Of a DNA stretch of 64,000 bases, positions 17,700 to 26,789 are shown one piece after another (within the stretch, counting starts at the first letter, position 1; each line of letters begins with the position of its first letter). The stretch spans positions 19,187 through 83,186 of the forward strand of contig NIVC01003679.1 of NCBI GenBank assembly GCA_002269645.1, read 5' to 3'. This DNA comes from Macrostomum lignano (taxonomy: Eukaryota). A program made the translations under genes and the position numbers. Under the pieces are notes generated by a model that saw nothing but the letters and a program-made list of their open reading frames with translations, did no database searches and was not told the origin of the DNA.

Positions 17700-18206
17700 T
17701 TGGGAGTTCAGCTGGGGGATATGGGAGTTCAGCTGAGGGATATGGGAGTTCAGCTGGGGGATATGGGAGTTCAGCTGAGGGATATGAGAGTTCAGCTGAG
17801 GGATAGGGGATTTCAGCTGAGGAATATAAGATTTCAGCTGAAGGATATGGGATTTCAGCTGAGGGATATGGGATTTCAGCTGAGGGATATAAGATTTCAG
17901 CTGAGGATATCGGATTTCAGCTGAGGGATATGGGATTTCAGCTGAGGGATATAAGATTTCAGCTGAGGATATCGGATTTCAGCTGAGGGATAGGGGATTT
18001 CAGCTGAGGAATATAAGATTTCAGCTGAGGGACATGGGATTTCAGCTGAGGGATAGGGGATTTCAGCTGAGGATATCGGATTTCAGCTGAGGGATAGGGG
18101 ATTTCAGCTGAGGGATAGGGGATTTCAGCTGAGGGATAGGGGATTTCAGCTGAGGGATAGGGGATTTCAGATGAGGATATCGGATTTTAGCTGAGGGATA
18201 TGGGAT
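17700..18206 (+). repeat. ~20-21-bp minisatellite (GGGATTTCAGCTGAGGGATAT)n
   Basis: About 24 copies immediately upstream of the first TM2D3 exon. Confidence 0.93.
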
Positions 18207-18984
18207 TACATACATGTAATGCATACAAATAAAAAAAATCGATAATAATGAAACCAAATAATAAGATTATATTGTAAAAGTTACATGCATTGCACTAAAA
18301 CACGATTGCAACGTTGACAACAGTGAAATAAAAGCACAATGATTGTAAGAAAATCTAAACATTAGTGACAAATGAATACATGAACATGCTAGCTAGTAGT
18401 ACATGTAGCTCAACAGGCCTATGGTAAATGTAAAAGTTAGAACAAGAGATTATACAGAGAGAAAAAACCACATGCTGTTCAAAAATTGGTCAGCAACAGC
18501 AGGCGATCACAGGACAAATCAAAACAAAGCTACGAGTTTCACAAGCTGCACAAACAGTTGACCTTCAAAAGTTAGGACAAAAGAACCGAGGGAAAAATCA
18601 TAAAACTGCATTGCATTGCAGCACAAGCACTGGTGGATATGCTATTGAGACTCCGGTAGTGGAACATCTGTAGATAAAAAATGGTGCAAGCAGACAGGAA
18701 TTCATTGTCCAGTGAGATTGCCGCAGCTCCAACTTAGCGATGTCTTGGAATGCAGGCGACAGCAGCTTCGGCTTCAGAGAAAAAAAGAAGAGAAAGGAGA
18801 TGACAATTTACTGGCAATAGTGAAACACAGTGCGCGGCAGAGCAGTGCTCAAAATGGTGTCTGGGAAATCAGAGGTAGATTTCTATTGCAGAAAAATATT
18901 AATACGAAAATATGGTCCCACTGAAATTGGACTGAAACAGACAGAAGGGGCACAAGAGTTTTTTAGCGTGGGGGGCGGAAGGGA

Positions 18985-19210
18985 TTAGTAAGGGGCGGAA
19001 AGGAATAGTAAGGGGGCGGAAAGGACTAGTTAAGGGGGCGGAGAGGACTAGTAAGGGGGCGGAAAGGACTAGTAAGGGGGGCGGAAAGGACTAGTAAGGG
19101 GGGAAAGGACTAGTAAGGGGGCGGAAAGGACTGGTAAGGGGGCGGAAAGGACTAGTAAGGGGGGCGGAAAGGACTAGTAAGAGGGCAGAAAGGACTAGTA
19201 AGGGGCGGAC
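18985..19210 (+). repeat. ~21-bp minisatellite (TAAGGGGGCGGAAAGGACTAG)n downstream of the MRAS stop
   Basis: About 10 copies. Confidence 0.9.
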
Positions 19211-19240: not shown

Positions 19241-22200
19241 TCACATGACTCGGCATTTTCGTTTGCGCCTTGGCGGAGGCGGCGGCGCCTCGGGCGGCTG
19301 CATGCGGATGGCCTGCACCACAGAGTGGAAGGCCTCGTCCACGTTGAATGGCGGGTCTTTGGCGCTGGTCTCGATGTACTGGATCTGCGGGAAATTGGCA
19401 TAGCGGCTAGTACGATGATAGCTATGAGTGCACCACACAGCCAATCCTATGAAATGAACTAACAACCTGCATTCCTTGGCTCATCAGCAGACACCCCAGT
19501 CTCTCAGCAGACACCCAGTCCAACAGCAGACACCCCAGTCCATCAGCAGACACCCAGTCCATCAGCAGACACCCCACTCCCTCAGCAGACACCCCAATCC
19601 CTCAGCAGACACCCATTCCCTCAGCAGACACCCCAGTCCATCAGCAGACACCCAAGTCCATCAGCAGACACCCAGTCGAACAGCAGACACCCCAGTCCCC
19701 CAACAGACGCACGCGAAGGCGTATTCAGCACGCCAGTGAAGTATGAGACAGACCAGGCCTATGGGCTACGGTCTGCGATGCTTCACGCCTGCCCCTATCT
19801 TCAGCAGGTCAAGGCTGGAGGGAGGTCTGCACCCGCTATTTGCCGCTGGCAACCGCAGACCCCCCCCCTCACGCTGTTTCGCAAGTCGACCCAGGGTACT
19901 CGTCCCCGCGTGTGTTCAAGGCAGACCCTAGGGCTGCTGGACAGACTGGGCTCCGACGCTGGCGACCCATCCAGTGGCTTCGGCCGAACTTGGGTATGCA
20001 GGTCTGGCTTGCCAGCCTGCAGGCCGTGGTACTGCTTAACGTACCCCCTATTGCATAAGGTGTTTGACCGTACCGATGGGCTGGAAGGCCGGGGGGTTGT
20101 CCGGTCGCTAGCGGTCCTTTTCTTTTTCTTCTTTCCTCTTTCTTTTGTGACTCTGCTCACTCCTTCCCGCTTTCAGCTATGGCGTCATCCGCCTCTTTCA
20201 ACCCCGCTGAAGCCGGGGCCCCGGCAACTCCGGCCGGTGACTCTGGCACCAGCGCCGCCCCACCGGGGGCAGATGGGCTTGCCGCCGGCTCCGCCGGTGA
20301 CATGCCCGCACGCGCAACCGGGCCCTCCGCTGAAGCCCGACGCGCCCGTAACCAACGCCGCAACGAGCGACGACGGCGACTGCGGGATACTGCGGGCCGG
20401 CCACCGGCGGAGGGGGAACCTAGGGAGGGCGAGGCTGCTGTTGGGCCGAAAGGAGCCACAGCAACCCCTGCCCCCCAGGATACAACCCCCGCTGGTGAGC
20501 CACCCAGTAAACCTGCTACAAGCGCGGCCGGGCCTTCGGGAACCGCAGCCACCAACTACGCCTCAAAGGTCAAGCTCCAACCGGCGGTCATCGTCTTCGG
20601 GGAAGAGCAGGACCTCACGGCCGACGAGCTCGACAGTGCCTGGCGCACCATTGATGCTGCGCTCATCGACCAGCTCCTGGCGGGCCGCCCTGTGAGCGTG
20701 GTCAAGTCTGCCAAGACCGGCGGCTGCATCTTCATCTGGTGCAACTCGGAGGAGAGCAGCCGCAATCTACGCGAGCTTCTGCCAAAGCTGAACTGGCCCA
20801 AGAAGCTCGGCAAGCTCGTCTTCGCCAGCGAAGGCGAGTGACAGAAGACCCAGCGCTTTCGCGTCTGGATCCCGGCCGGCAGTGCCATTAAGTCCGGAGA
20901 TCAGCTTAGGCAAATATTGCTAAAGCTGCACCCCGACCTTGAGGTCAATGGGCTCCTACACCACGCCACTTCCCGCAAGGAGAAGGGGGCTACGGTGATC
21001 CTAGGGCTCTCTGATGACTGGGCTAAGCGCTTGCCGCCTAAGTCCACAATTCATATTGGTCTGACTAAGCTGACCATCCTCCGTTGCGAGGAGCGGAAAG
21101 CTGATGAAGCCAAGAATGCCAAGGCTTCCGAAACCGGAACTGGGGCCCAGGCTCCTCCGGCAAAGAAGCCGAGGCAAACGGTCGACCCTATGCCCGGTAA
21201 GGCAGTTCGCGCTGCTGAAACCGGAAACCGAAATCGCAGACCCGCCAGGAGCACCCGGAGGTCCGGCCTAATACAGCGCGCGCTGGACCAGGCCAAGAGC
21301 CTTCGGGCGCATCGTGAGCGGGCCCGCGCCTCTCGCGCTCCACCCCAACAGCCAGAAGGCCAGGCTCTAAGCGGGGAGGCTCCGACCGACTGGTTCGAGT
21401 CTGTGACTCACCAGGAGGCTGGCACCACCCGCATCGACCTGACCGACGAGGCAGAGGGGACGGGCAGTGACAGCAACGAAGCACGCAGGGGAGGCGACGG
21501 TAACGTCCACGCTGGGCTCACGTCCGCGGAGGACTCCACAGCCACCCTAACTGCTGAGGACGCTGAAACTCCCATGGAGGTCTGCGGGTCACCCACCACT
21601 GAAAAGGAGGATGATGATCTGCTCAACGATTCCCCAACTGCGTGATAATGATCAGCAACCAGGGAATCCATTGCCTGCAGATTAATCTGCAACACTGCGT
21701 CGCAGCCTCGGTCAACCTTATGCGTTACGCCGAGCTCGACAAGCCGGGGCTCATCCTCGTCCAGGAACCCTGGACTCTGAGAGGTAAGCCTCAAAACGCC
21801 CCTGCTGGCTACAATTGTTTTTATACTTACCCTCGCGAGGCCAACCAGCCTCCCAGAGCTTGCATCTTTGCGAGAAAAACGCTCAGTGCGTGGCTCAGAT
21901 CGGACCTGTCCAACAGGGACATCTGCGTCATCCAATCCGAGGACCTCCTTCCTGGGAAGACCACCCTCATTGCCTCGGTTTACTTACCAGGTGATGCTGC
22001 GGTCGTCCCCAGAGCCCTCGCTACGCTGGTAGAGCTTTGCTCTGCCAAAAACTACGAGCTCATGGTTGCCGGCGACATCAACGCCCACCACACTCACTGG
22101 GGCAGCACTGGCACTAATCAGAGAGGCGAAGACCTCCTAGCCTACGTTGCCTCTACGACCCTCGAGTTCTGCAACTCTGGGTCCACCCCTACCTTTGACA

Positions 22201-25200
22201 ACGGACGGTGGTCGGAGGTGATCGACGCTACGCTCGCAACGCCCAGACTCTACCAGAGTATTGGAGCGTGGCGGGTGCTTCCAGTGTCCTCACTCTCGGA
22301 TCACAAGTTCATCTCCTTCAACCTAATGGCCGCGCGTTGCGCAACTCGTGTTACGTGGAGACGGAACGCCAGAAATACTGATTGGGAAACCTTCGGGCTC
22401 GCCCTGAAGGAATTCCATCGGTCTCCTGGCCAACCATCCACGATCACGTCGTGCCGAGAGGCGGATGAGTGCGCGACTGTTTTGACAGAGACGCTAACCG
22501 CCGCCTTTGAGGCGTCCTGCCCTTTAAAAGCCTATAAAGGGAAAAAAATCCGCGCCGTGGTGGAATCCCGAGCTCGGCAACCTCCGTCGCAGGGCTAAGA
22601 GACTCCACCGCAGAGCAACTAAAACTAAGAGCCCAGCGGACCAAACCGCCTATCATGAAGCAATTCATGAGTTTAAAAGGCAGGTTAGGAATGCAAAGGC
22701 TCAAAAATGGCGACAATACTGTGAGGAGCTAGAGGGCTCACGCCCCACCTCTAGAGTTGTGAAAGCGCTCACGCTGGACAAAATGTCTAAGCTCTCCTCG
22801 GTCAAACGCACCGACGGTACGTCCACGGACAACCCAGGGGAAACGCTTGATGTAATGCTCACTGCGTTCTTCTCCAACGAGCCAGCTAACCCGACCACTC
22901 CGGATCACTCGGAGGGAGGTCACGCGCTGGCCGCCTCTATCATCACGGAGGACCGCATCGTGAGAGCGGCTAATTCCTTCAAGCCTTTCAAAGCCCCAGG
23001 ACCCGACGGCATTGTACCGGCCCTCCTAAGAGAGGCTGTTAAATGCCCAGGCTTCCTGCGCAAACTTTGCAGCCTTCTTCGGGCATGCATCACGCTTGAT
23101 TATGTCCCACAGGCATGGACCGAGGCAAAGGTGATCTTTATCCCTAAGCCAGGCCGCCCGGACTACCATTCTATCAAATCCTTCAGACCGATCAGCCTGA
23201 CCTCCTCCCTGGTCAAGCTGATGGAGAGACTGGTGCTTTGGCGCCTTCTCTCTGTTGAGCTGAAGAACAAACCTCTCAGCGAGAACCAGCACGCTTTTCG
23301 GGCGGGTCGCTCCACTGAAAGCGCGCTGCACGTCCTGGTCGATAAACTCGAGAAGGCCGTGCTTGGTAATGGCTTTGCTCTGGGGATCTTCCTGGACATC
23401 ATTGGCGCCTTCGATAACGTCCTCTTTGAGGCGTTCCGAAGAGCTCTTTGTGAGAGGCAAACGCACTCACATCTCACCAGATGGATCATGTATATGATCA
23501 GCCATCGCACGGCCACCGCCAGTCTGCTGGGCTACCAGAGGACGGTCCCCGTCTGCAAAGGTAGCCCGCAAGGTGGGGTGCTGTCTCCAGTTCTCTGGAA
23601 TATGGTCATCGATGAGCTCCTCCGGGATGTTCGGCCTGACCCCATTCTGAAAGTTGGATATGCGGACGATGTCACCGCGGTGGCATCTGGTCCGTCCCCT
23701 GATACCCTCAGGGACCTTCTTCAGAACTTCATCTACGCCGCTGAGCAATGGGCGTACCGCTGTGGTTTAAGGCTCTCTGAGACTAAGACCGCAGCGATCA
23801 TGTTCACCAGCAGGACCAAGTGGCAGATTCGGCCGCTCACGCTTTACGGAAGGGAAATCCCCTTCTGCAAGCAGACTAAATGTCTGGGTATTACCCTGGA
23901 CCACAGGCTGAACTGGTCACCCCACGTTCAAGCAAAAGCCAAAAAGGCCTTCGTAGTCCTCGCGCAATTGCGCAGGGCTGTCGGCACCACCTGGGGGCTC
24001 ACCCCCAAGCGCCTCTGGTGGATCTACACTGCAATGGTTAGGCCCGCTATCTCGTATGGCGGCCTGATCTGGGCTAGCGCCCTGCAGGTAAAGACCTGTC
24101 TAGAGGCTCTCAGGAGAGCGCAAGGGCGCGCATGTCGCATGATCATGAGCGCCCCTCCGTCTGCTCCTTACGATGGCCTCAACGCCTTCCTCAACATTCC
24201 TCCGCTGGAAATCTTTGTCCGCAGGGAAGCGGCTAAGACTGCCCGCCGTCTAGCTGACGCTGGCATTCGAATCCAGCCCCATAGGGCCATGGCTAAGCGC
24301 AAGCTTTTGCCCCACGCTGACCTCTGCCTCAAGGACTTGAGAGACAGCGGCGGGCTCCACGTCTTATCTGACGGCGAACCCCGCACTCTCAACCTCTTTC
24401 AGCGCTACAAGGTCACCATCCCCTCTAGGGATGCTGCCAATGACCACTGGAAATTCCAGGAGGTCCATTGCTACACGGACGGATCCATCAAAGACGGTCG
24501 CGCCGGCTTTGGGGTCTGCATCATCATCGACGGCCGCGTAATTGCCACGCATGCCCAGCACACTGGTAGACTCTCCACAGTCTTCCAGAACGAAGTTCTT
24601 GCCATCAGCTCTTGCGCTGCAGAGCTGAACGCCAAGGGTACGAGAGGAAAGACTATTGTCATCCACTCCGACAGCCAAGCGGCCTTACAGGCCCTTTGCC
24701 ACACCACAACGAACTCCCGGACAGTCGCCGACTGCGCCCGGCAGCTCAACCTCCTGGCCAGTAGCAATACTGTCAGGCTGAAATGGATCCCAGGGCACGC
24801 AGGCTTTCCGGGGAACGAGCTGGCAGACACCCTCGCCAAGAGGGGCGGCTCTGGCTCTTTCTTCGGCCCTGCCCCCCTGGTCCCTATGCCCTTGACAGTC
24901 ATCAATCGTCAGATCGACGACTGGGCTGACTCCCTCCACAGGGACAGATGGGCGGGCACCCAAAACTGCCGGCAATCTCGTGCCGCGGTTCCCTGCCCGT
25001 CTCGCAGGCTCAGAAACATCCTTCTGAACCAGAATCGGAAGGATATTCGAGCCCTTGTCATGACCCTTACTGGCCATGGCTACCTCGCCAGGCACTGCTT
25101 CCTCCGAGGTGACCTCGAGAGCGAACTTTGCCCCTTTTGCGAGTACGACAATGAAGATGCTCAGCACTTTGTTTGTCACTGCCCTTTCTTTAACAGAGAC

Positions 25201-26789
25201 CGGCTACGCTACCTTGGGCCGAACCCGTCCATTGACGAGGTCTGCCAGCCCGACAGCATCCCACGGCTCATCCAGTTCCTTCGGGCGACTAGACGAGCCA
25301 GTTTCTTCCCAACGGAAGATCACGCTGCAGGACGGACCGGCGGACCACCCAGACTGGCCCCACGCCTCTGCCTGTCTGCGGACCTTCAGGGGCTAGCGGA
25401 ATGGGCGACCCTCGCCTCCCCGCTGTGTCTACGGACCACCCTGCAGCTAAGTCAAGTAAGTAAGTCAAGTCCCCCAACAGACACCCCAGTCCCTCAGCAG
25501 ACACCCCAGTCCATCAGCAGACACCCCAGTCCCCCAGCAGACACCAAAGTCCATCAGCAGACAACCCAGTCCATCAGCAGACACCCCAGTCCATCAGCAG
25601 ACACCCCAGTCCATCAGCAGACACCCAAGTCCATCAGCAGACACCCCAGTCCATTAGCAGGCACCCCAGTCCATCAGCAGACACACACCAGTCCCTCAGC
25701 AGACACCCCAGTCCATCAGCAGCCGGTACCTTGAGCTGACTGGCCAGCTGTTTGCCCTCCTCCTCGCAGACCCGCCTGGAGTGCACCAGGTCAACCTTGT
25801 TGGCCACCAGAATCATGGGGTAGTGCTCCTTGTCTTTCACGCGCAGGATTTGCGTGTGAAAATGGCGCATATCGTCGAAGCTCTTACAATCGGTGACGGA
25901 GTACACCAGCAGGAAGCCGTCACCCTTGCGCATGTACTGCTCGCGCATGGCAGAGAACTCCTCCTGGCCTGCGGAGAGGGGACGGGCTGGGGAGCTGAGA
26001 CTGAGGGAAGTTGGGATTTGAGCAATTTAAGGATAGCTCAGTAGCTCTATGGTTAGATGGATTAATAAAAGACGGGGATGGGAAGAGGCAGGTAGGGATT
26101 GGATTTCAAGGATGGGAAGAGGATGGTAGGGATGGGATTTGGAATGGGAAGAGGCTGGTAGGGATGGGATTTGGAGTACGAAGAGGCTGGTAGGGATTGG
26201 ATTTAGGATGGGAAGAGGATGGTAGGGATGGGATTTGGGGTACGAAGAGGCTGGTAGGGATTGGATTTAGGATGGGAAGAGGATGGTAGGGATGGGATTT
26301 GGAGTACGAAGAGGCTGGTAGGGATTGGATTTAGGATGGGAAGAGGATGGTAGGGATGGGATTTGGGGTACGAAGAGGCTGGTAGGGATGGGATTTGGAA
26401 TGGGAAGAGGCTGGTAGTGATGGGATTTGGGGTACGAAGAGGCTGGTAGTGATGGGATTTGGGGTGGGAAGAGGCTGGTAGTGATGGGATTTGGGGTGGA
26501 AAGAGGCTGGTAGGGATGGGATTTGGAATGGAACGAGACCAGTAGGGATCCTCACAAGCAGCAAGGCAGCAGACCTACCAGCTGTATCCAGGACATCCAG
26601 CAAGTACCAGTCGCTGCCAATCATCTTGTACTGGATGTAGGAGTCCTCAATGGTTGGGTCATAGTCCTGCACAAACATCTTCTGGAAGAACTGAATGGTG
26701 AGTGCACTCTTGCCAACACCGCCATTGCCAACTACTACTAGCTTGTAAGTTTTGATGTTCTCGTCACAGTTGGGAGGTCTGTTGGCCAT
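19241..26789 (-). CDS. MRAS: M-Ras-like small GTPase, 197 aa
   Basis: Exons 26789-26579, 25968-25730 and 19384-19241 splice in frame (phases 1, 0). [77 protein letters not shown] (M-Ras-type) and a C-terminal RRKRKCRVM CaaX box. Confidence 0.93.
19480..19708 (+). repeat. 20-bp minisatellite (CAGCAGACACCCCAGTCCAT)n, left part, split by the LINE
   Basis: The same array resumes at 25468-25722. Confidence 0.92.
19709..19957 (+). ncRNA. Candidate HDV-like self-cleaving ribozyme at the LINE 5' end
   Basis: P1 GCACGCG (19709-15) with CGCGTGT (19907-13), including a G1.U wobble; P2 CCCAG with CTGGG; P3 GG(G)/(C)CC closing loop TACTCGT; P1.1 AC/GT; P4 hairpin; J4/2 CAGA. Folded by hand. Confidence 0.72.
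20179..21645 (+). CDS. LINE ORF1, split by one in-frame TGA at 20839-20841
   Basis: ORFs 20179-20841 and 20917-21645 are in the same frame, and the sequence between them is open ([13 protein letters not shown]). No CCHC knuckle seen. Confidence 0.75.
21648..25734 (+). CDS. LINE ORF2 (AP endonuclease, reverse transcriptase, RNase H, CCHC finger) with a +1 frameshift at A7 22542-22548
   Basis: APE motifs QINLQH, VQEPW, GDINAHH..WGS and SDH; RT motifs [32 protein letters not shown] and YADD; RNase [19 protein letters not shown] and [15 protein letters not shown]; [14 protein letters not shown]. Confidence 0.9.
25468..25722 (+). repeat. 20-bp minisatellite, right part
   Basis: Continuation of the 19480-19708 array. 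Confidence 0.92.
26085..26530 (+). repeat. ~30-bp purine-rich minisatellite in MRAS intron 1
   Basis: GGGATGGGATTTGG(R)GTACGAAGAGGCTGGTA-like units. Confidence 0.9.

What the first reader, a model, noticed from the sequence alone, without database searches (positions are those of the whole stretch)
19709..19957. HDV-like ribozyme fold begins at the exact first nucleotide of a full-length LINE
Seen: the TSD ends at 19708, and G19709 opens P1 (GCACGCG with CGCGTGT 19907-13, G.U wobble at position 1). The rest follows in HDV order: P2 5' CCCAG (19890-94), P3 GG(G), L3 TACTCGT, P3' CCC, P1', then GT (19914-15) pairing with L3 AC as P1.1. That is an A-U pair in place of the usual C-G, which looks like covariation. 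Next come a P4 hairpin (GCAG-a-CC[CTAG]GG-CTGC), J4/2 C19942-A-G-A (CNRA, putative catalytic C) and P2' CTGGG, with a possible GTCG/CGAC extension. J1/2 is about 170 nt and holds its own hairpins (GGCGT/ACGCC, CAGACC/GGTCTG). Caveat: G19894 is needed by both P2 and P3, so P3 is 2 bp or a G is missing from the run. Known: HDV-like ribozymes process the 5' ends of R2, RTE and LOA-type retrotransposons. Inference: self-cleavage defines this element's 5' end and could free it from read-through transcripts. I do not know whether it has been described in this lineage.
Basis: partly seen in the sequence, partly recalled or inferred. Interest (0 to 1): 0.85.

Follow-up and report, generated by a model that had tools for sequence, protein, structure and literature searches.

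The report
HDV-like ribozyme heading a flatworm LINE
The first 249 bases of a 5.8-kb LINE retrotransposon in the flatworm Macrostomum lignano fold like a hepatitis-delta-type self-cleaving ribozyme, and two related elements keep the fold through compensating base changes, so it is a new example of a known way for LINEs to trim their own RNA 5' end.

Summary
A 5761-bp LINE (19709-25469; endonuclease, reverse transcriptase and RNase H) lies between perfect 13-bp target-site duplications inside a 20-bp minisatellite. Its first base, G19709, opens a 7-bp P1 helix with a G.U first pair. The remaining helices follow in HDV order: P2 with an extension, P3, L3, P1.1, P4 and J4/2.

Two relatives from public assemblies keep the same fold: L002 (ORF2 62% identical) and L001 (ORF1 66% identical). 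Between them there are seven fully compensated base pairs, in P1, P2, the P2 extension and both P1.1 pairs. Contig L002 begins exactly at the G of its own, differently spelled, P1. Under dinucleotide shuffling, a descriptor match anchored at base 1 occurs 9 times in 40000 (window) and 20 in 40000 (L002).

Both relatives have separate P2 and 3-bp P3 strands, so this copy is one G short. It also carries an ORF1 stop and an A7-run frameshift, and may be a crippled copy.

The 169-nt J1/2 is a conserved, closed multi-hairpin domain, within the known size range. Self-cleavage was not tested, and no Rfam model matches. Verdict: new member of a known kind, of moderate interest.

The parts
19696..19708 (+). 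Left target-site duplication TCCCCCAACAGAC, a variant unit of the 20-bp minisatellite 19482-19708.
   Evidence: Identical 13-mer at 25470-25482 (15-mer if the AG shared with the LINE tail is counted)..
19709..25469 (+). Whole LINE copy, 5761 bp: 5'UTR with ribozyme, ORF1, ORF2 (APE-RT-RNase H) and 3'UTR with a TAAGTCAAG-type tail.
   Evidence: Pfam Exo_endo_phos_2, RVT_1 and RNase_H. Best protein hits are 94-96% identical Macrostomum lignano entries. No second copy in the window.
19709..19715 (+). P1 5' strand GCACGCG. The predicted cleavage site is immediately 5' of G19709.
   Evidence: 7 bp with 19907-13, first pair G.U. L002 has GCCTGC/GCAGGC with two pairs changed on both sides.
19716..19884 (+). 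J1/2 peripheral domain, 169 nt. It is a closed multi-hairpin fold. The closing helix is 19719-21/19880-82, 19723/19879 and 19726-29/19873-76. The best-conserved hairpin is 19740-19782.
   Evidence: MFE -70.9 kcal/mol, z -3.0. L002 counterpart -83.3 kcal/mol, z -2.8, with the same architecture. RNAalifold gives 12 of 39 pairs changed on both sides.
19885..19888 (+). P2 extension, 5' strand GTCG.
   Evidence: Pairs with 19954-57. U-A in the window is C-G in L001 and L002.
19890..19894 (+). P2 5' strand CCCAG. G19894 is also needed by P3.
   Evidence: Pairs with 19946-50. L002 has CTCAGA/TCTGAG and L001 has CCCAAA/TTTGGG, with compensated changes.
19894..19896 (+). P3 5' strand GGG. It is only 2 bp if G19894 stays in P2.
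   Evidence: GGG/CCC is invariant in all three sequences. The relatives have a separate full P3.
19897..19903 (+). L3 loop UACUCGU.
   Evidence: U at position 1 and CG at positions 5-6 are kept in L001 (UUCUCGU) and L002 (UCUCCGU).
19904..19906 (+). P3 3' strand CCC.
19907..19913 (+). P1 3' strand CGCGUGU.
19914..19915 (+). P1.1 3' strand GU, pairing with C19899 and A19898 of L3.
   Evidence: L002 has AG pairing with U and C of its L3, so both pairs are compensated. L001 keeps only the inner pair.
19916..19941 (+). J1.1/4 (UCAA) and the P4 hairpin: G19920.U19938, 19921-24/19934-37, 19926-27/19932-33, loop CUAG.
   Evidence: A hairpin is kept in L001 (8 bp) and in L002 (10 bp, with a different sequence).
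19942..19945 (+). J4/2 CAGA, with C19942 as the candidate catalytic cytosine.
   Evidence: A C lies exactly 4 nt before the P2 3' strand in all three sequences (CAGA, CGUG, CUGC).
19946..19950 (+). P2 3' strand CUGGG.
19954..19957 (+). P2 extension, 3' strand CGAC. The 1x3 internal loop (A19889 against C19951-C19953) has the same size in all three sequences.
19958..20178 (+). Rest of the 5'UTR, partly conserved with L001 and L002 (for example the GGC-UUCG-GCC hairpin at 19977-86).
20179..21645 (+). ORF1, interrupted by TGA at 20839-41 where L001 and L002 have Arg.
21648..25469 (+). ORF2 (APE, RT, RNase H, C-terminal Cys/His motif) and the 3'UTR. There is a +1 frameshift in the A7 run at 22542-48, and no stop codon in frame before the element ends.
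25470..25482 (+). Right target-site duplication.

Best explanation
The first 249 nt of this Macrostomum lignano LINE (APE-RT-RNase H type) encode a large HDV-like self-cleaving ribozyme.

Proposed mechanism:
1. The element is transcribed as part of a longer RNA, either read-through from the surrounding minisatellite or host transcription unit, or from a promoter of its own.
2. The RNA folds into the nested double pseudoknot: P1 stacked on P1.1 and P4, and P2 stacked on P3.
3. A structured 169-nt J1/2 domain, closed by its own helix, holds P1 next to P2.
4. The J4/2 cytosine (C19942) and a bound Mg2+ catalyse attack of the 2'-OH of C19708 on the phosphate 5' of G19709.
5. The released RNA starts with a 5'-OH at G19709 and still carries the whole ribozyme. 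Every full-length cDNA copy therefore begins at that base and can repeat the trick at a new locus.

What is shown: the exact element boundary, the fold, its conservation and its covariation. What is inferred: the cleavage itself and its chemistry.

This particular copy is probably weakened or dead. It is one G short at the P2/P3 junction, it has an ORF1 stop and an ORF2 frameshift, and its upstream flank can extend P1 at the expense of P1.1.
For: 1. Boundary. A 13-bp TSD and restoration of the minisatellite phase put the 5' end at G19709.

2. Fold. All HDV elements are present in the canonical order, with a G.U first pair, a 7-nt L3 of the form U..(U/C)CG., a 2-bp P1.1, and a C located 4 nt before the P2 3' strand.

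3. Covariation.
- P1: A-U to C-G, C-G to U-A, and G.U to G-C.
- P2 extension: U-A to C-G.
- P2: C-G to U-A, and G-C to A-U.
- P1.1: C-G to U-A, and A-U to C-G.
- P3: GGG/CCC invariant.
- P4: kept as a hairpin with a different sequence.

4. L002, an independently assembled contig with ORF2 62% identical, starts at base 1 with the P1 strand of its own ribozyme.

5. Anchored shuffle test: 9 of 40000 and 20 of 40000.

6. The J1/2 domains of the window and L002 fold into the same closed architecture, z about -3 each. A helix in J1/2 that pinches P1 and P2 together is known to activate large HDV-like ribozymes (PMC4908430).

7. Precedent. HDV-like ribozymes cleave at the 5' end of R4, Dong, Baggins and L1Tc, and R2 has J1/2 loops of 216-498 nt (PMC3774820). 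The ribozyme persists in the mRNA after cleavage (PMC3185411).
Against: - No cleavage assay or RNA 5'-end data exist.
- Only three sequences are available. L001 lacks the P1 5' strand because its contig is 5'-truncated.
- No Rfam HDV-type model matches the window or L002, even at E<=10. The models cannot span a 160-170-nt J1/2.
- In the window G19894 is shared, so P3 is 2 bp or P2 is 4 bp.
- The J4/2 motif CNRA is met only in the window (CAGA). L001 has CGUG and L002 has CUGC.
- The first P1 pair in L002 is G-C, not G.U.
- The outer P1.1 pair in L001 is U.U.
- P1' can also pair with a second GCACGC at 19728-33 (6 bp).
- More distant relatives (30-46% identity) show no such fold in their upstream regions.
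Confidence: 0.8

Rival explanations
1. The family encodes a working ribozyme, but this copy no longer cleaves. It is a fossil of a cleavage that happened in its parent RNA. It has a one-base loss at the P2/P3 junction and coding defects.
For: The relatives have 9 nt where the window has 7, and a separate 3-bp P3. The copy has a TGA in ORF1, probably by CGA-to-TGA (L001 and L002 have Arg there). It has an A7 frameshift. Flank bases -1 to -3 (GAC) can pair with G19914, U19915 and U19916 and compete with P1.1. This effect has been described for L1Tc and R2 (PMC3185411).
Against: Both length anomalies, GGG and A7, sit in homopolymer runs, where long-read assemblies often err, so the real sequence may be intact. 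Tolerance of a 2-bp P3 is unknown.
Confidence: 0.5
2. The conserved fold is a structured 5'UTR that serves another purpose: translation initiation, protein binding, or, as DNA, an internal promoter. The 5' end is set by transcription initiation, not by cleavage.
For: The J1/2 hairpin 19740-19782 is about 83% identical to L002, more than the flanking UTR (alignment). This suggests a sequence-specific role. L1Tc's first 77 nt are both promoter and ribozyme (PMC3383444, PMC3185411).
Against: A promoter or protein site does not explain compensated changes in two pseudoknotted helices (P1, P1.1) or the HDV order of all elements. Dual function would add to cleavage, not replace it.
Confidence: 0.1
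3. Chance resemblance: a GC-rich 5'UTR happens to satisfy a loose HDV descriptor.
For: The loose descriptor gives chance matches in the window's two strands and very many in high-GC bacterial DNA.
Against: Anchored at base 1, the match occurs in about 2 and 5 per 10000 shuffles in two independent elements. There are seven compensated pairs.
Confidence: 0.02

Closest known systems
[quoted passage not shown]
   Same: Position at base 1 of the element, the double-pseudoknot order, cleavage 5' of a G that opens P1, and retention of the ribozyme in the transposed copy. The host element carries APE, RT and RNase H, an architecture that from my own knowledge is that of the I, LOA and ingi groups (PMC3774820, PMC3185411).
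   Different: The host phylum is a macrostomid flatworm. No sequence similarity to those ribozymes was detected, and Rfam models including drz-Agam do not hit. J1/2 is much longer than in L1Tc, whose ribozyme is 77 nt in total. The exact LINE clade was not determined here.
R2 element ribozymes
   Same: Large J1/2 insertions (216-498 nt in silkmoths; P1 and P1' up to more than 700 nt apart), a variable P4, and few invariant core bases. An R2 ribozyme is predicted in the planarian Schmidtea (PMC3774820).
   Different: R2 has a restriction-like endonuclease, inserts in 28S rDNA, and often cleaves 28 nt upstream in the rRNA. This element has an APE, inserts with a TSD in a minisatellite, and would cleave at its own first base.
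drz-Agam-2 'large' HDV-like ribozymes with a P1.2 peripheral helix
   Same: A helix inside J1/2 that brings the outer ends of P1 and P2 together. Here the closing helix starts 3-4 nt after P1 and ends 2 nt before the extended P2 (PMC4908430).
   Different: The domain here is a roughly 160-nt multi-hairpin structure, not a single helix. Its activating role is untested.
Twister-variant ribozymes of Schistosoma mansoni Perere-3/SR3 LINEs
   Same: A flatworm LINE with an APE endonuclease and a TSD carries a 5' self-cleaving ribozyme that is kept after insertion (PMC8501958).
   Different: A different ribozyme class (twister, not HDV-like) and a different LINE lineage.
Genomic HDV ribozyme
   Same: From my own knowledge of the HDV ribozyme, the following match. 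A 7-bp P1 with G1.U37. A 3-bp P3. L3 UCCUCGCU against UACUCGU here. A 2-bp P1.1 to L3 positions 2-3. J1.1/4 GCAA, which is identical in L002 and UCAA in the window. A catalytic C followed by 3 nt before P2.
   Different: J1/2 is 169 nt against 2-3 nt. P1.1 has A-U and G-C pairs instead of two G-C pairs. In the window and L001 two extra bases lie between P4 and the C.

Membership tests
HDV-like self-cleaving ribozymes | Nested double pseudoknot in the order P1, J1/2, P2, P3, L3, P3', P1', P1.1, P4, J4/2, P2'. | tested here: met
   All segments are present in that order in the window, L001 (except the P1 5' strand, which is missing from the contig) and L002.
HDV-like self-cleaving ribozymes | P1 of about 7 bp that opens with G at the cleavage site, usually as a G.U wobble. 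| tested here: met
   Window: 7 bp with G19709.U19913. L002: 6 bp with G1-C194, so no wobble there. Two P1 pairs are compensated.
HDV-like self-cleaving ribozymes | A 3-bp P3 closing a 7-8-nt L3 that carries the conserved U and G. | tested here: inconclusive
   L001 and L002 meet it fully (GGG/CCC, L3 7 nt with U1 and G6). In the window G19894 must serve both P2 and P3, so P3 is 2 bp unless a G is missing.
HDV-like self-cleaving ribozymes | P1.1 mini-helix between L3 and the bases just 3' of P1. | tested here: met
   Window: C-G plus A-U. L002: U-A plus C-G, both compensated. L001: C-G plus a U.U mismatch. A one-pair P1.1 is known in L1Tc (PMC3185411).
HDV-like self-cleaving ribozymes | Catalytic cytosine at the start of J4/2 (CNRA in published descriptors, from my own knowledge). 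| tested here: inconclusive
   A C lies 4 nt before P2' in all three sequences. CNRA is met only in the window (CAGA); L001 has CGUG and L002 has CUGC.
HDV-like self-cleaving ribozymes | Mg2+-dependent self-cleavage giving 2',3'-cyclic phosphate and 5'-OH ends. | not testable with these tools
   No biochemical or RNA-end data are available.
HDV-like self-cleaving ribozymes | A match to a curated covariance model (Rfam HDV_ribozyme, CPEB3, drz-Agam and similar). | tested here: not met
   No hit at gathering score in the window. No hit at E<=10 in 19600-20200 or in L002 1-620. This is expected with a 160-170-nt J1/2, and it does not test the fold.
Ribozyme-terminated non-LTR retrotransposons | The cleavage site coincides with the first base of full-length copies. 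| tested here: met
   The TSD-defined start at G19709 is the first P1 base. Contig L002 starts at its own P1 G. These are only two elements, and other genomic copies could not be reached.
LOA / I / ingi-type LINEs (APE-RT-RNase H) | ORF2 with APE, RT and RNase H domains, ORF1 upstream, and a TSD. | tested here: met
   Pfam hits and the TSD. Assignment to one named clade was not tested, because no reference RT set was available.

The most novel reading that the evidence does not exclude
The roughly 160-nt J1/2 insert may be more than a spacer. It could be a conserved regulatory module. Its closing helix is spelled like a second copy of P1: the 5' strand mimics P1' and the 3' strand mimics the P1 5' strand. 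The RNA could therefore switch between two states. In the active state P1 and the closing helix both form. In the alternative state the 5' end is locked in a local hairpin (bases 3-6 with 11-14) and P1' pairs locally. In L001 that alternative is itself a complete compact HDV-like ribozyme. Together with the 83%-conserved hairpin at 19740-82, this could make the 5' end a combined promoter or protein-binding site and a conformationally gated ribozyme. It would be the first described in a flatworm APE-type LINE.
Probability: 0.2. Interest if true: 0.6.

Novelty: new member of a known kind. Interest (0 to 1): 0.42.

Why it matters
[quoted passage not shown] The only ribozyme-bearing flatworm LINEs I found described are the Schmidtea R2 element (predicted) and the twister-variant elements of Schistosoma.

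It gives a clean test case: a TSD-defined 5' end, a homologue with a fully canonical core, and a large conserved J1/2 domain whose role in folding could be measured.

For annotation, it explains why full-length copies of this family should all start at the same G. It also offers a marker for telling full-length copies from 5'-truncated ones.

Tried and rejected
- Rfam, at gathering score and at permissive E-values, on the window and on L002. No HDV-type hit. The only matches were weak miRNA, CRISPR-repeat and snoRNA matches, which I take as chance.
- BLAST of the element against the window. No second copy.
- Protein search with ORF1. One relative only. A search with a trimmed ORF1 profile found none.
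- A 60%-identical Logan relative, P0004.
- Metagenome scan with an APE profile. It returned 80 loci, all 30-47% identical in the best matching segment and mostly from the same few sample series. My strict descriptor found no plausible ribozyme in them: 8 scattered hits in about 0.69 Mb counting both strands.
- Three longer contigs of 38-44% relatives, with 450-900 nt upstream of ORF1. No HDV-like candidate, even with L3 unconstrained.
- Viral contigs, by DNA pattern and by two protein profiles. Nothing.
- Genome contigs, by DNA pattern. Five matches in high-GC bacterial sequence, which I take as chance: none gave a match comparable to the window or L002, and the relaxed descriptor used there matched throughout these high-GC loci.
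- A covariance model or R-scape on three sequences. Not built. MAFFT misaligns P4 and J4/2, and three sequences give no statistical power. I counted pairs by hand in a script instead.
- The identity of run ERR14788467 and of the JGI sample could not be found in the paper library.
- The idea that L001's local P1 (GCTCGC at 76-81) marks its true 5' end. Rejected, because L001 bases 1-75 are homologous to the window's J1/2.
Full report
**What is there**

The window is from the flatworm Macrostomum lignano. The reverse-transcriptase reading frame is 94-96% identical to UniRef entries of that species.

Bases 19709-25469 are one LINE copy of 5761 bp. ORF2 carries an APE-type endonuclease, a reverse transcriptase and RNase H. 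The 3' end is a short TAAGTCAAG-type repeat.

The copy sits inside a 20-bp minisatellite, consensus unit CAGACACCCCAGTCCATCAG, found at 19482-19708 and 25478-25722. It is flanked by a perfect 13-bp duplication, TCCCCCAACAGAC, at 19696-19708 and 25470-25482. This is a one-off variant of the repeat unit. Joining the two flanks restores the 20-nt phase of the array. [quoted passage not shown]

The copy is full-length in extent but not intact.
- ORF1 has a TGA at 20839-41 where two relatives have arginine.
- ORF2 shifts frame in an A7 run at 22542-48.
- No stop codon closes ORF2 before the element ends.

There is no other copy in the window.

**The fold**

- P1: G19709-G19715 with C19907-U19913, 7 bp, first pair G.U.
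- P2 extension: GUCG 19885-88 with CGAC 19954-57.
- P2: CCCAG 19890-94 with CUGGG 19946-50.
- P3: GGG 19894-96 with CCC 19904-06.
- L3: UACUCGU.
- P1.1: G19914-C19899 and U19915-A19898.
- P4: a hairpin at 19921-37.
- J4/2: CAGA, starting at C19942.

The order is that of the HDV ribozyme.

**Is it more than chance?**

A descriptor of my own, run with loose length limits, is not specific on its own. With the shared G allowed it gives nine matches over the window's two strands. These comprise one at 19709 (seen in two L3/P1 registers), one at 19728 using the same core, and five loci elsewhere. In high-GC bacterial DNA it gives very many.

Anchoring changes the picture. I required the cleavage site to be base 1 of the element. 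Only 9 of 40000 dinucleotide-preserving shuffles of the first 300 nt matched. For the relative L002 the figure was 20 of 40000.

**Relatives**

Protein searches led to two related elements.
- L001 is a 4148-bp JGI metagenome contig, with ORF1 66% identical over the aligned full length.
- L002 is a 6492-bp Logan contig from run ERR14788467. Its ORF2 is 62% identical and its ORF1 37%.

Both have a homologous 5'UTR.

L002 contains a complete HDV-like fold that passes the strict descriptor.
- P1: GCCUGC with GCAGGC.
- P2 extension: GCCG with CGGC.
- P2: CUCAGA with UCUGAG.
- P3: GGG with CCC.
- L3: UCUCCGU.
- P1.1: AG.
- J1.1/4: GCAA, as in HDV.
- P4: 10 bp.
- J4/2: CUGC.

The contig begins exactly at the G of P1.

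L001 is cut about 90 nt short at its 5' end, so its P1 5' strand is missing. It keeps the P2 extension (GCCG/CGGC), P2 (CCCAAA/UUUGGG), P3 (GGG/CCC), L3 (UUCUCGU), P1' (CGCGAGC), P1.1 (GU), an 8-bp P4 and J4/2 (CGUG).

**Covariation**

The pair table shows seven pairs changed on both sides with pairing kept.
- Two in P1: A-U to C-G, and C-G to U-A.
- One in the P2 extension: U-A to C-G.
- Two in P2: C-G to U-A, and G-C to A-U.
- Both pairs of P1.1: C-G to U-A, and A-U to C-G.

There is also one one-sided change, G.U to G-C at the first P1 pair. P3 never varies. P4 is kept as a hairpin with a different sequence.

P1 and P1.1 are the two pseudoknot-forming helices. Their compensation is hard to explain by any model other than the HDV fold.

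Exceptions are few. L001's outer P1.1 pair is U.U; a single-pair P1.1 is known in the active L1Tc ribozyme (PMC3185411). L002's first P1 pair is G-C rather than the wobble. Only the C of J4/2 is conserved.

**The shared G**

Both relatives have nine bases where the window has seven: CUCAGAGGG and CCCAAAGGG against CCCAGGG. They have a P2 3' strand of six bases against the window's five.

With a 4-nt J4/2 in all three sequences, the window's 3' strand (CUGGG) calls for CCCAG plus GGG. That is one more G than is present.

The ORF2 frameshift is also a one-base length change in a homopolymer. Both could be assembly errors or real slippage mutations. The ORF1 stop is a substitution, probably CGA to TGA, and is more likely real. 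I could not reach reads or other copies.

**The long J1/2**

Bases 19716-19884 (169 nt) fold on their own into a closed multi-branch domain, -70.9 kcal/mol with z -3.0. L002 bases 7-164 do the same, -83.3 kcal/mol with z -2.8.

In both, a closing helix starts 3-4 nt after P1 and ends two A's before the P2 extension.
- Window: 19719-21 with 19880-82, continued by 19723/19879 and 19726-29/19873-76.
- L002: 11-19 with 154-162.

RNAalifold on the two sequences finds 12 of 39 pairs changed on both sides. With two sequences that is suggestive, not a test.

The hairpin at 19740-82 is about 83% identical between the two elements, more than the rest of the UTR.

Long J1/2 regions are known. They are 216-498 nt in silkmoth R2 ribozymes, and P1 and P1' can be more than 700 nt apart in honeybee R2 (PMC3774820). 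[quoted passage not shown]

**How it most likely works**

By analogy with R2, R4, Dong, Baggins and L1Tc (PMC3774820, PMC3185411), I expect the following.
1. The element RNA folds during transcription.
2. It cleaves itself 5' of G19709.
3. It is thereby released from any upstream transcript with a 5'-OH.
4. The ribozyme lies wholly downstream of the cut, so it is reverse-transcribed with the element. Every full-length copy then starts at the same G.

The exact boundary, the fold and its evolutionary maintenance are shown. Cleavage, its chemistry and any role in translation are inferred.

At this locus the upstream bases GAC (19706-08) could pair with G19914, U19915 and U19916. That would lengthen P1 at the cost of P1.1. 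Such an effect lowers cleavage in L1Tc and R2 (PMC3185411). Together with the short P2/P3 junction, this copy may cleave poorly or not at all.

**What argues against, and what I could not do**

- No Rfam model of the HDV class hits the window or L002, even at E<=10. I put this down to the long J1/2, but it does mean that no curated model supports membership.
- Only three sequences were available.
- Searches of metagenome, viral and prokaryote-genome collections found only distant LINE relatives or chance matches. The upstream regions of three 38-44% relatives show no HDV-like fold. The ribozyme may be confined to this sub-lineage.
- P1' can also pair with a second GCACGC at 19728-33. The TSD-defined start favours 19709.
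- An internal promoter cannot be excluded and could coexist with the ribozyme, as in L1Tc (PMC3383444).

**Comparison with what is known, and novelty**

This is the known class of ribozyme-terminated non-LTR retrotransposon, in a host and LINE lineage where I found no report. No paper in the searchable library joins the phrase 'HDV-like ribozyme' with any of the flatworm terms searched. What I did find for flatworms is a predicted R2 ribozyme in Schmidtea (PMC3774820) and twister-variant ribozymes in Schistosoma LINEs (PMC8501958).

I rate it a new member of a known kind, of moderate interest. The most novel reading left open is that the conserved J1/2 domain acts as a gate or a second functional module. 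Its closing helix is spelled like a second P1, which allows alternative pairings. These include a complete compact alternative ribozyme in L001.

Noticed in passing
window 19709-19734 and 19870-19884; L002 1-19 and 151-162; L001 76-81: The 5' strand of the J1/2 closing helix resembles P1', and its 3' strand resembles the P1 5' strand. Alternative pairings are therefore possible. Bases 3-6 of the element can pair with bases 11-14, and this pairing covaries between the window and L002. In L001 the local GCTCGC pairs with P1' to give a complete compact HDV-like fold with a 7-nt gap between this P1 and the 6-bp P2 (2 nt, AA, if the P2 extension is counted). The window also repeats GCACGC at 19728-33.
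   Followed up: partly
window 19740-19782 (L002 33-74): A hairpin inside J1/2 is about 83% identical between elements whose ORF1 proteins are only 37% identical. It is more conserved than the ribozyme helices. It could be a protein-binding site or, as DNA, a promoter element.
   Followed up: partly
window 22542-22548: The ORF2 frameshift sits in an A7 run. Relatives read [13 protein letters not shown], which needs one A fewer. It is the same kind of homopolymer length anomaly as the short G run at 19894-96.
   Followed up: yes
window 20839-20841: The in-frame TGA in ORF1 aligns with Arg in L001 and L002, probably a CGA-to-TGA change. It suggests the copy is truly mutated rather than only mis-assembled.
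   Followed up: yes
window 19706-19708 with 19914-19916: The flank bases GAC just upstream of the cleavage site can extend P1 by C-G, A-U and G.U pairs and so compete with P1.1. Upstream bases that extend P1 in this way (a G at -1 in L1Tc clones) reduce cleavage in L1Tc and R2.
   Followed up: no
window 20107-20114 and 25392-25399; 19977-19986: The motif GCTAGCGG occurs near the end of the 5'UTR and again in the 3'UTR. It is also in the L001 5'UTR, and as TTAGCGG in the L002 3'UTR. A GGC-UUCG-GCC tetraloop hairpin follows the ribozyme and is kept in L001.
   Followed up: no
window 18000-18207, 18971-19209, 19482-19708 plus 25478-25722, 26075-26549: The region is a patchwork of minisatellites with periods of 21, 21, 20 and 32 bp. 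The LINE inserted into the 20-bp array.
   Followed up: partly
window 25330-25469: ORF2 has no in-frame stop before the element ends and reads on into the flanking repeat (ORF listed to 25734). L002 has a TGA about 115 nt before its tail, so the window copy has probably lost its stop.
   Followed up: partly
L002 5954-6492 (minus strand): Contig L002 runs about 540 bp past the LINE's 3' end into unrelated sequence with a 142-aa minus-strand ORF, yet stops exactly at the LINE's first base on the 5' side. This would fit an RNA-derived contig or an assembly break at a repeat boundary. The nature of the run is unknown.
   Followed up: partly
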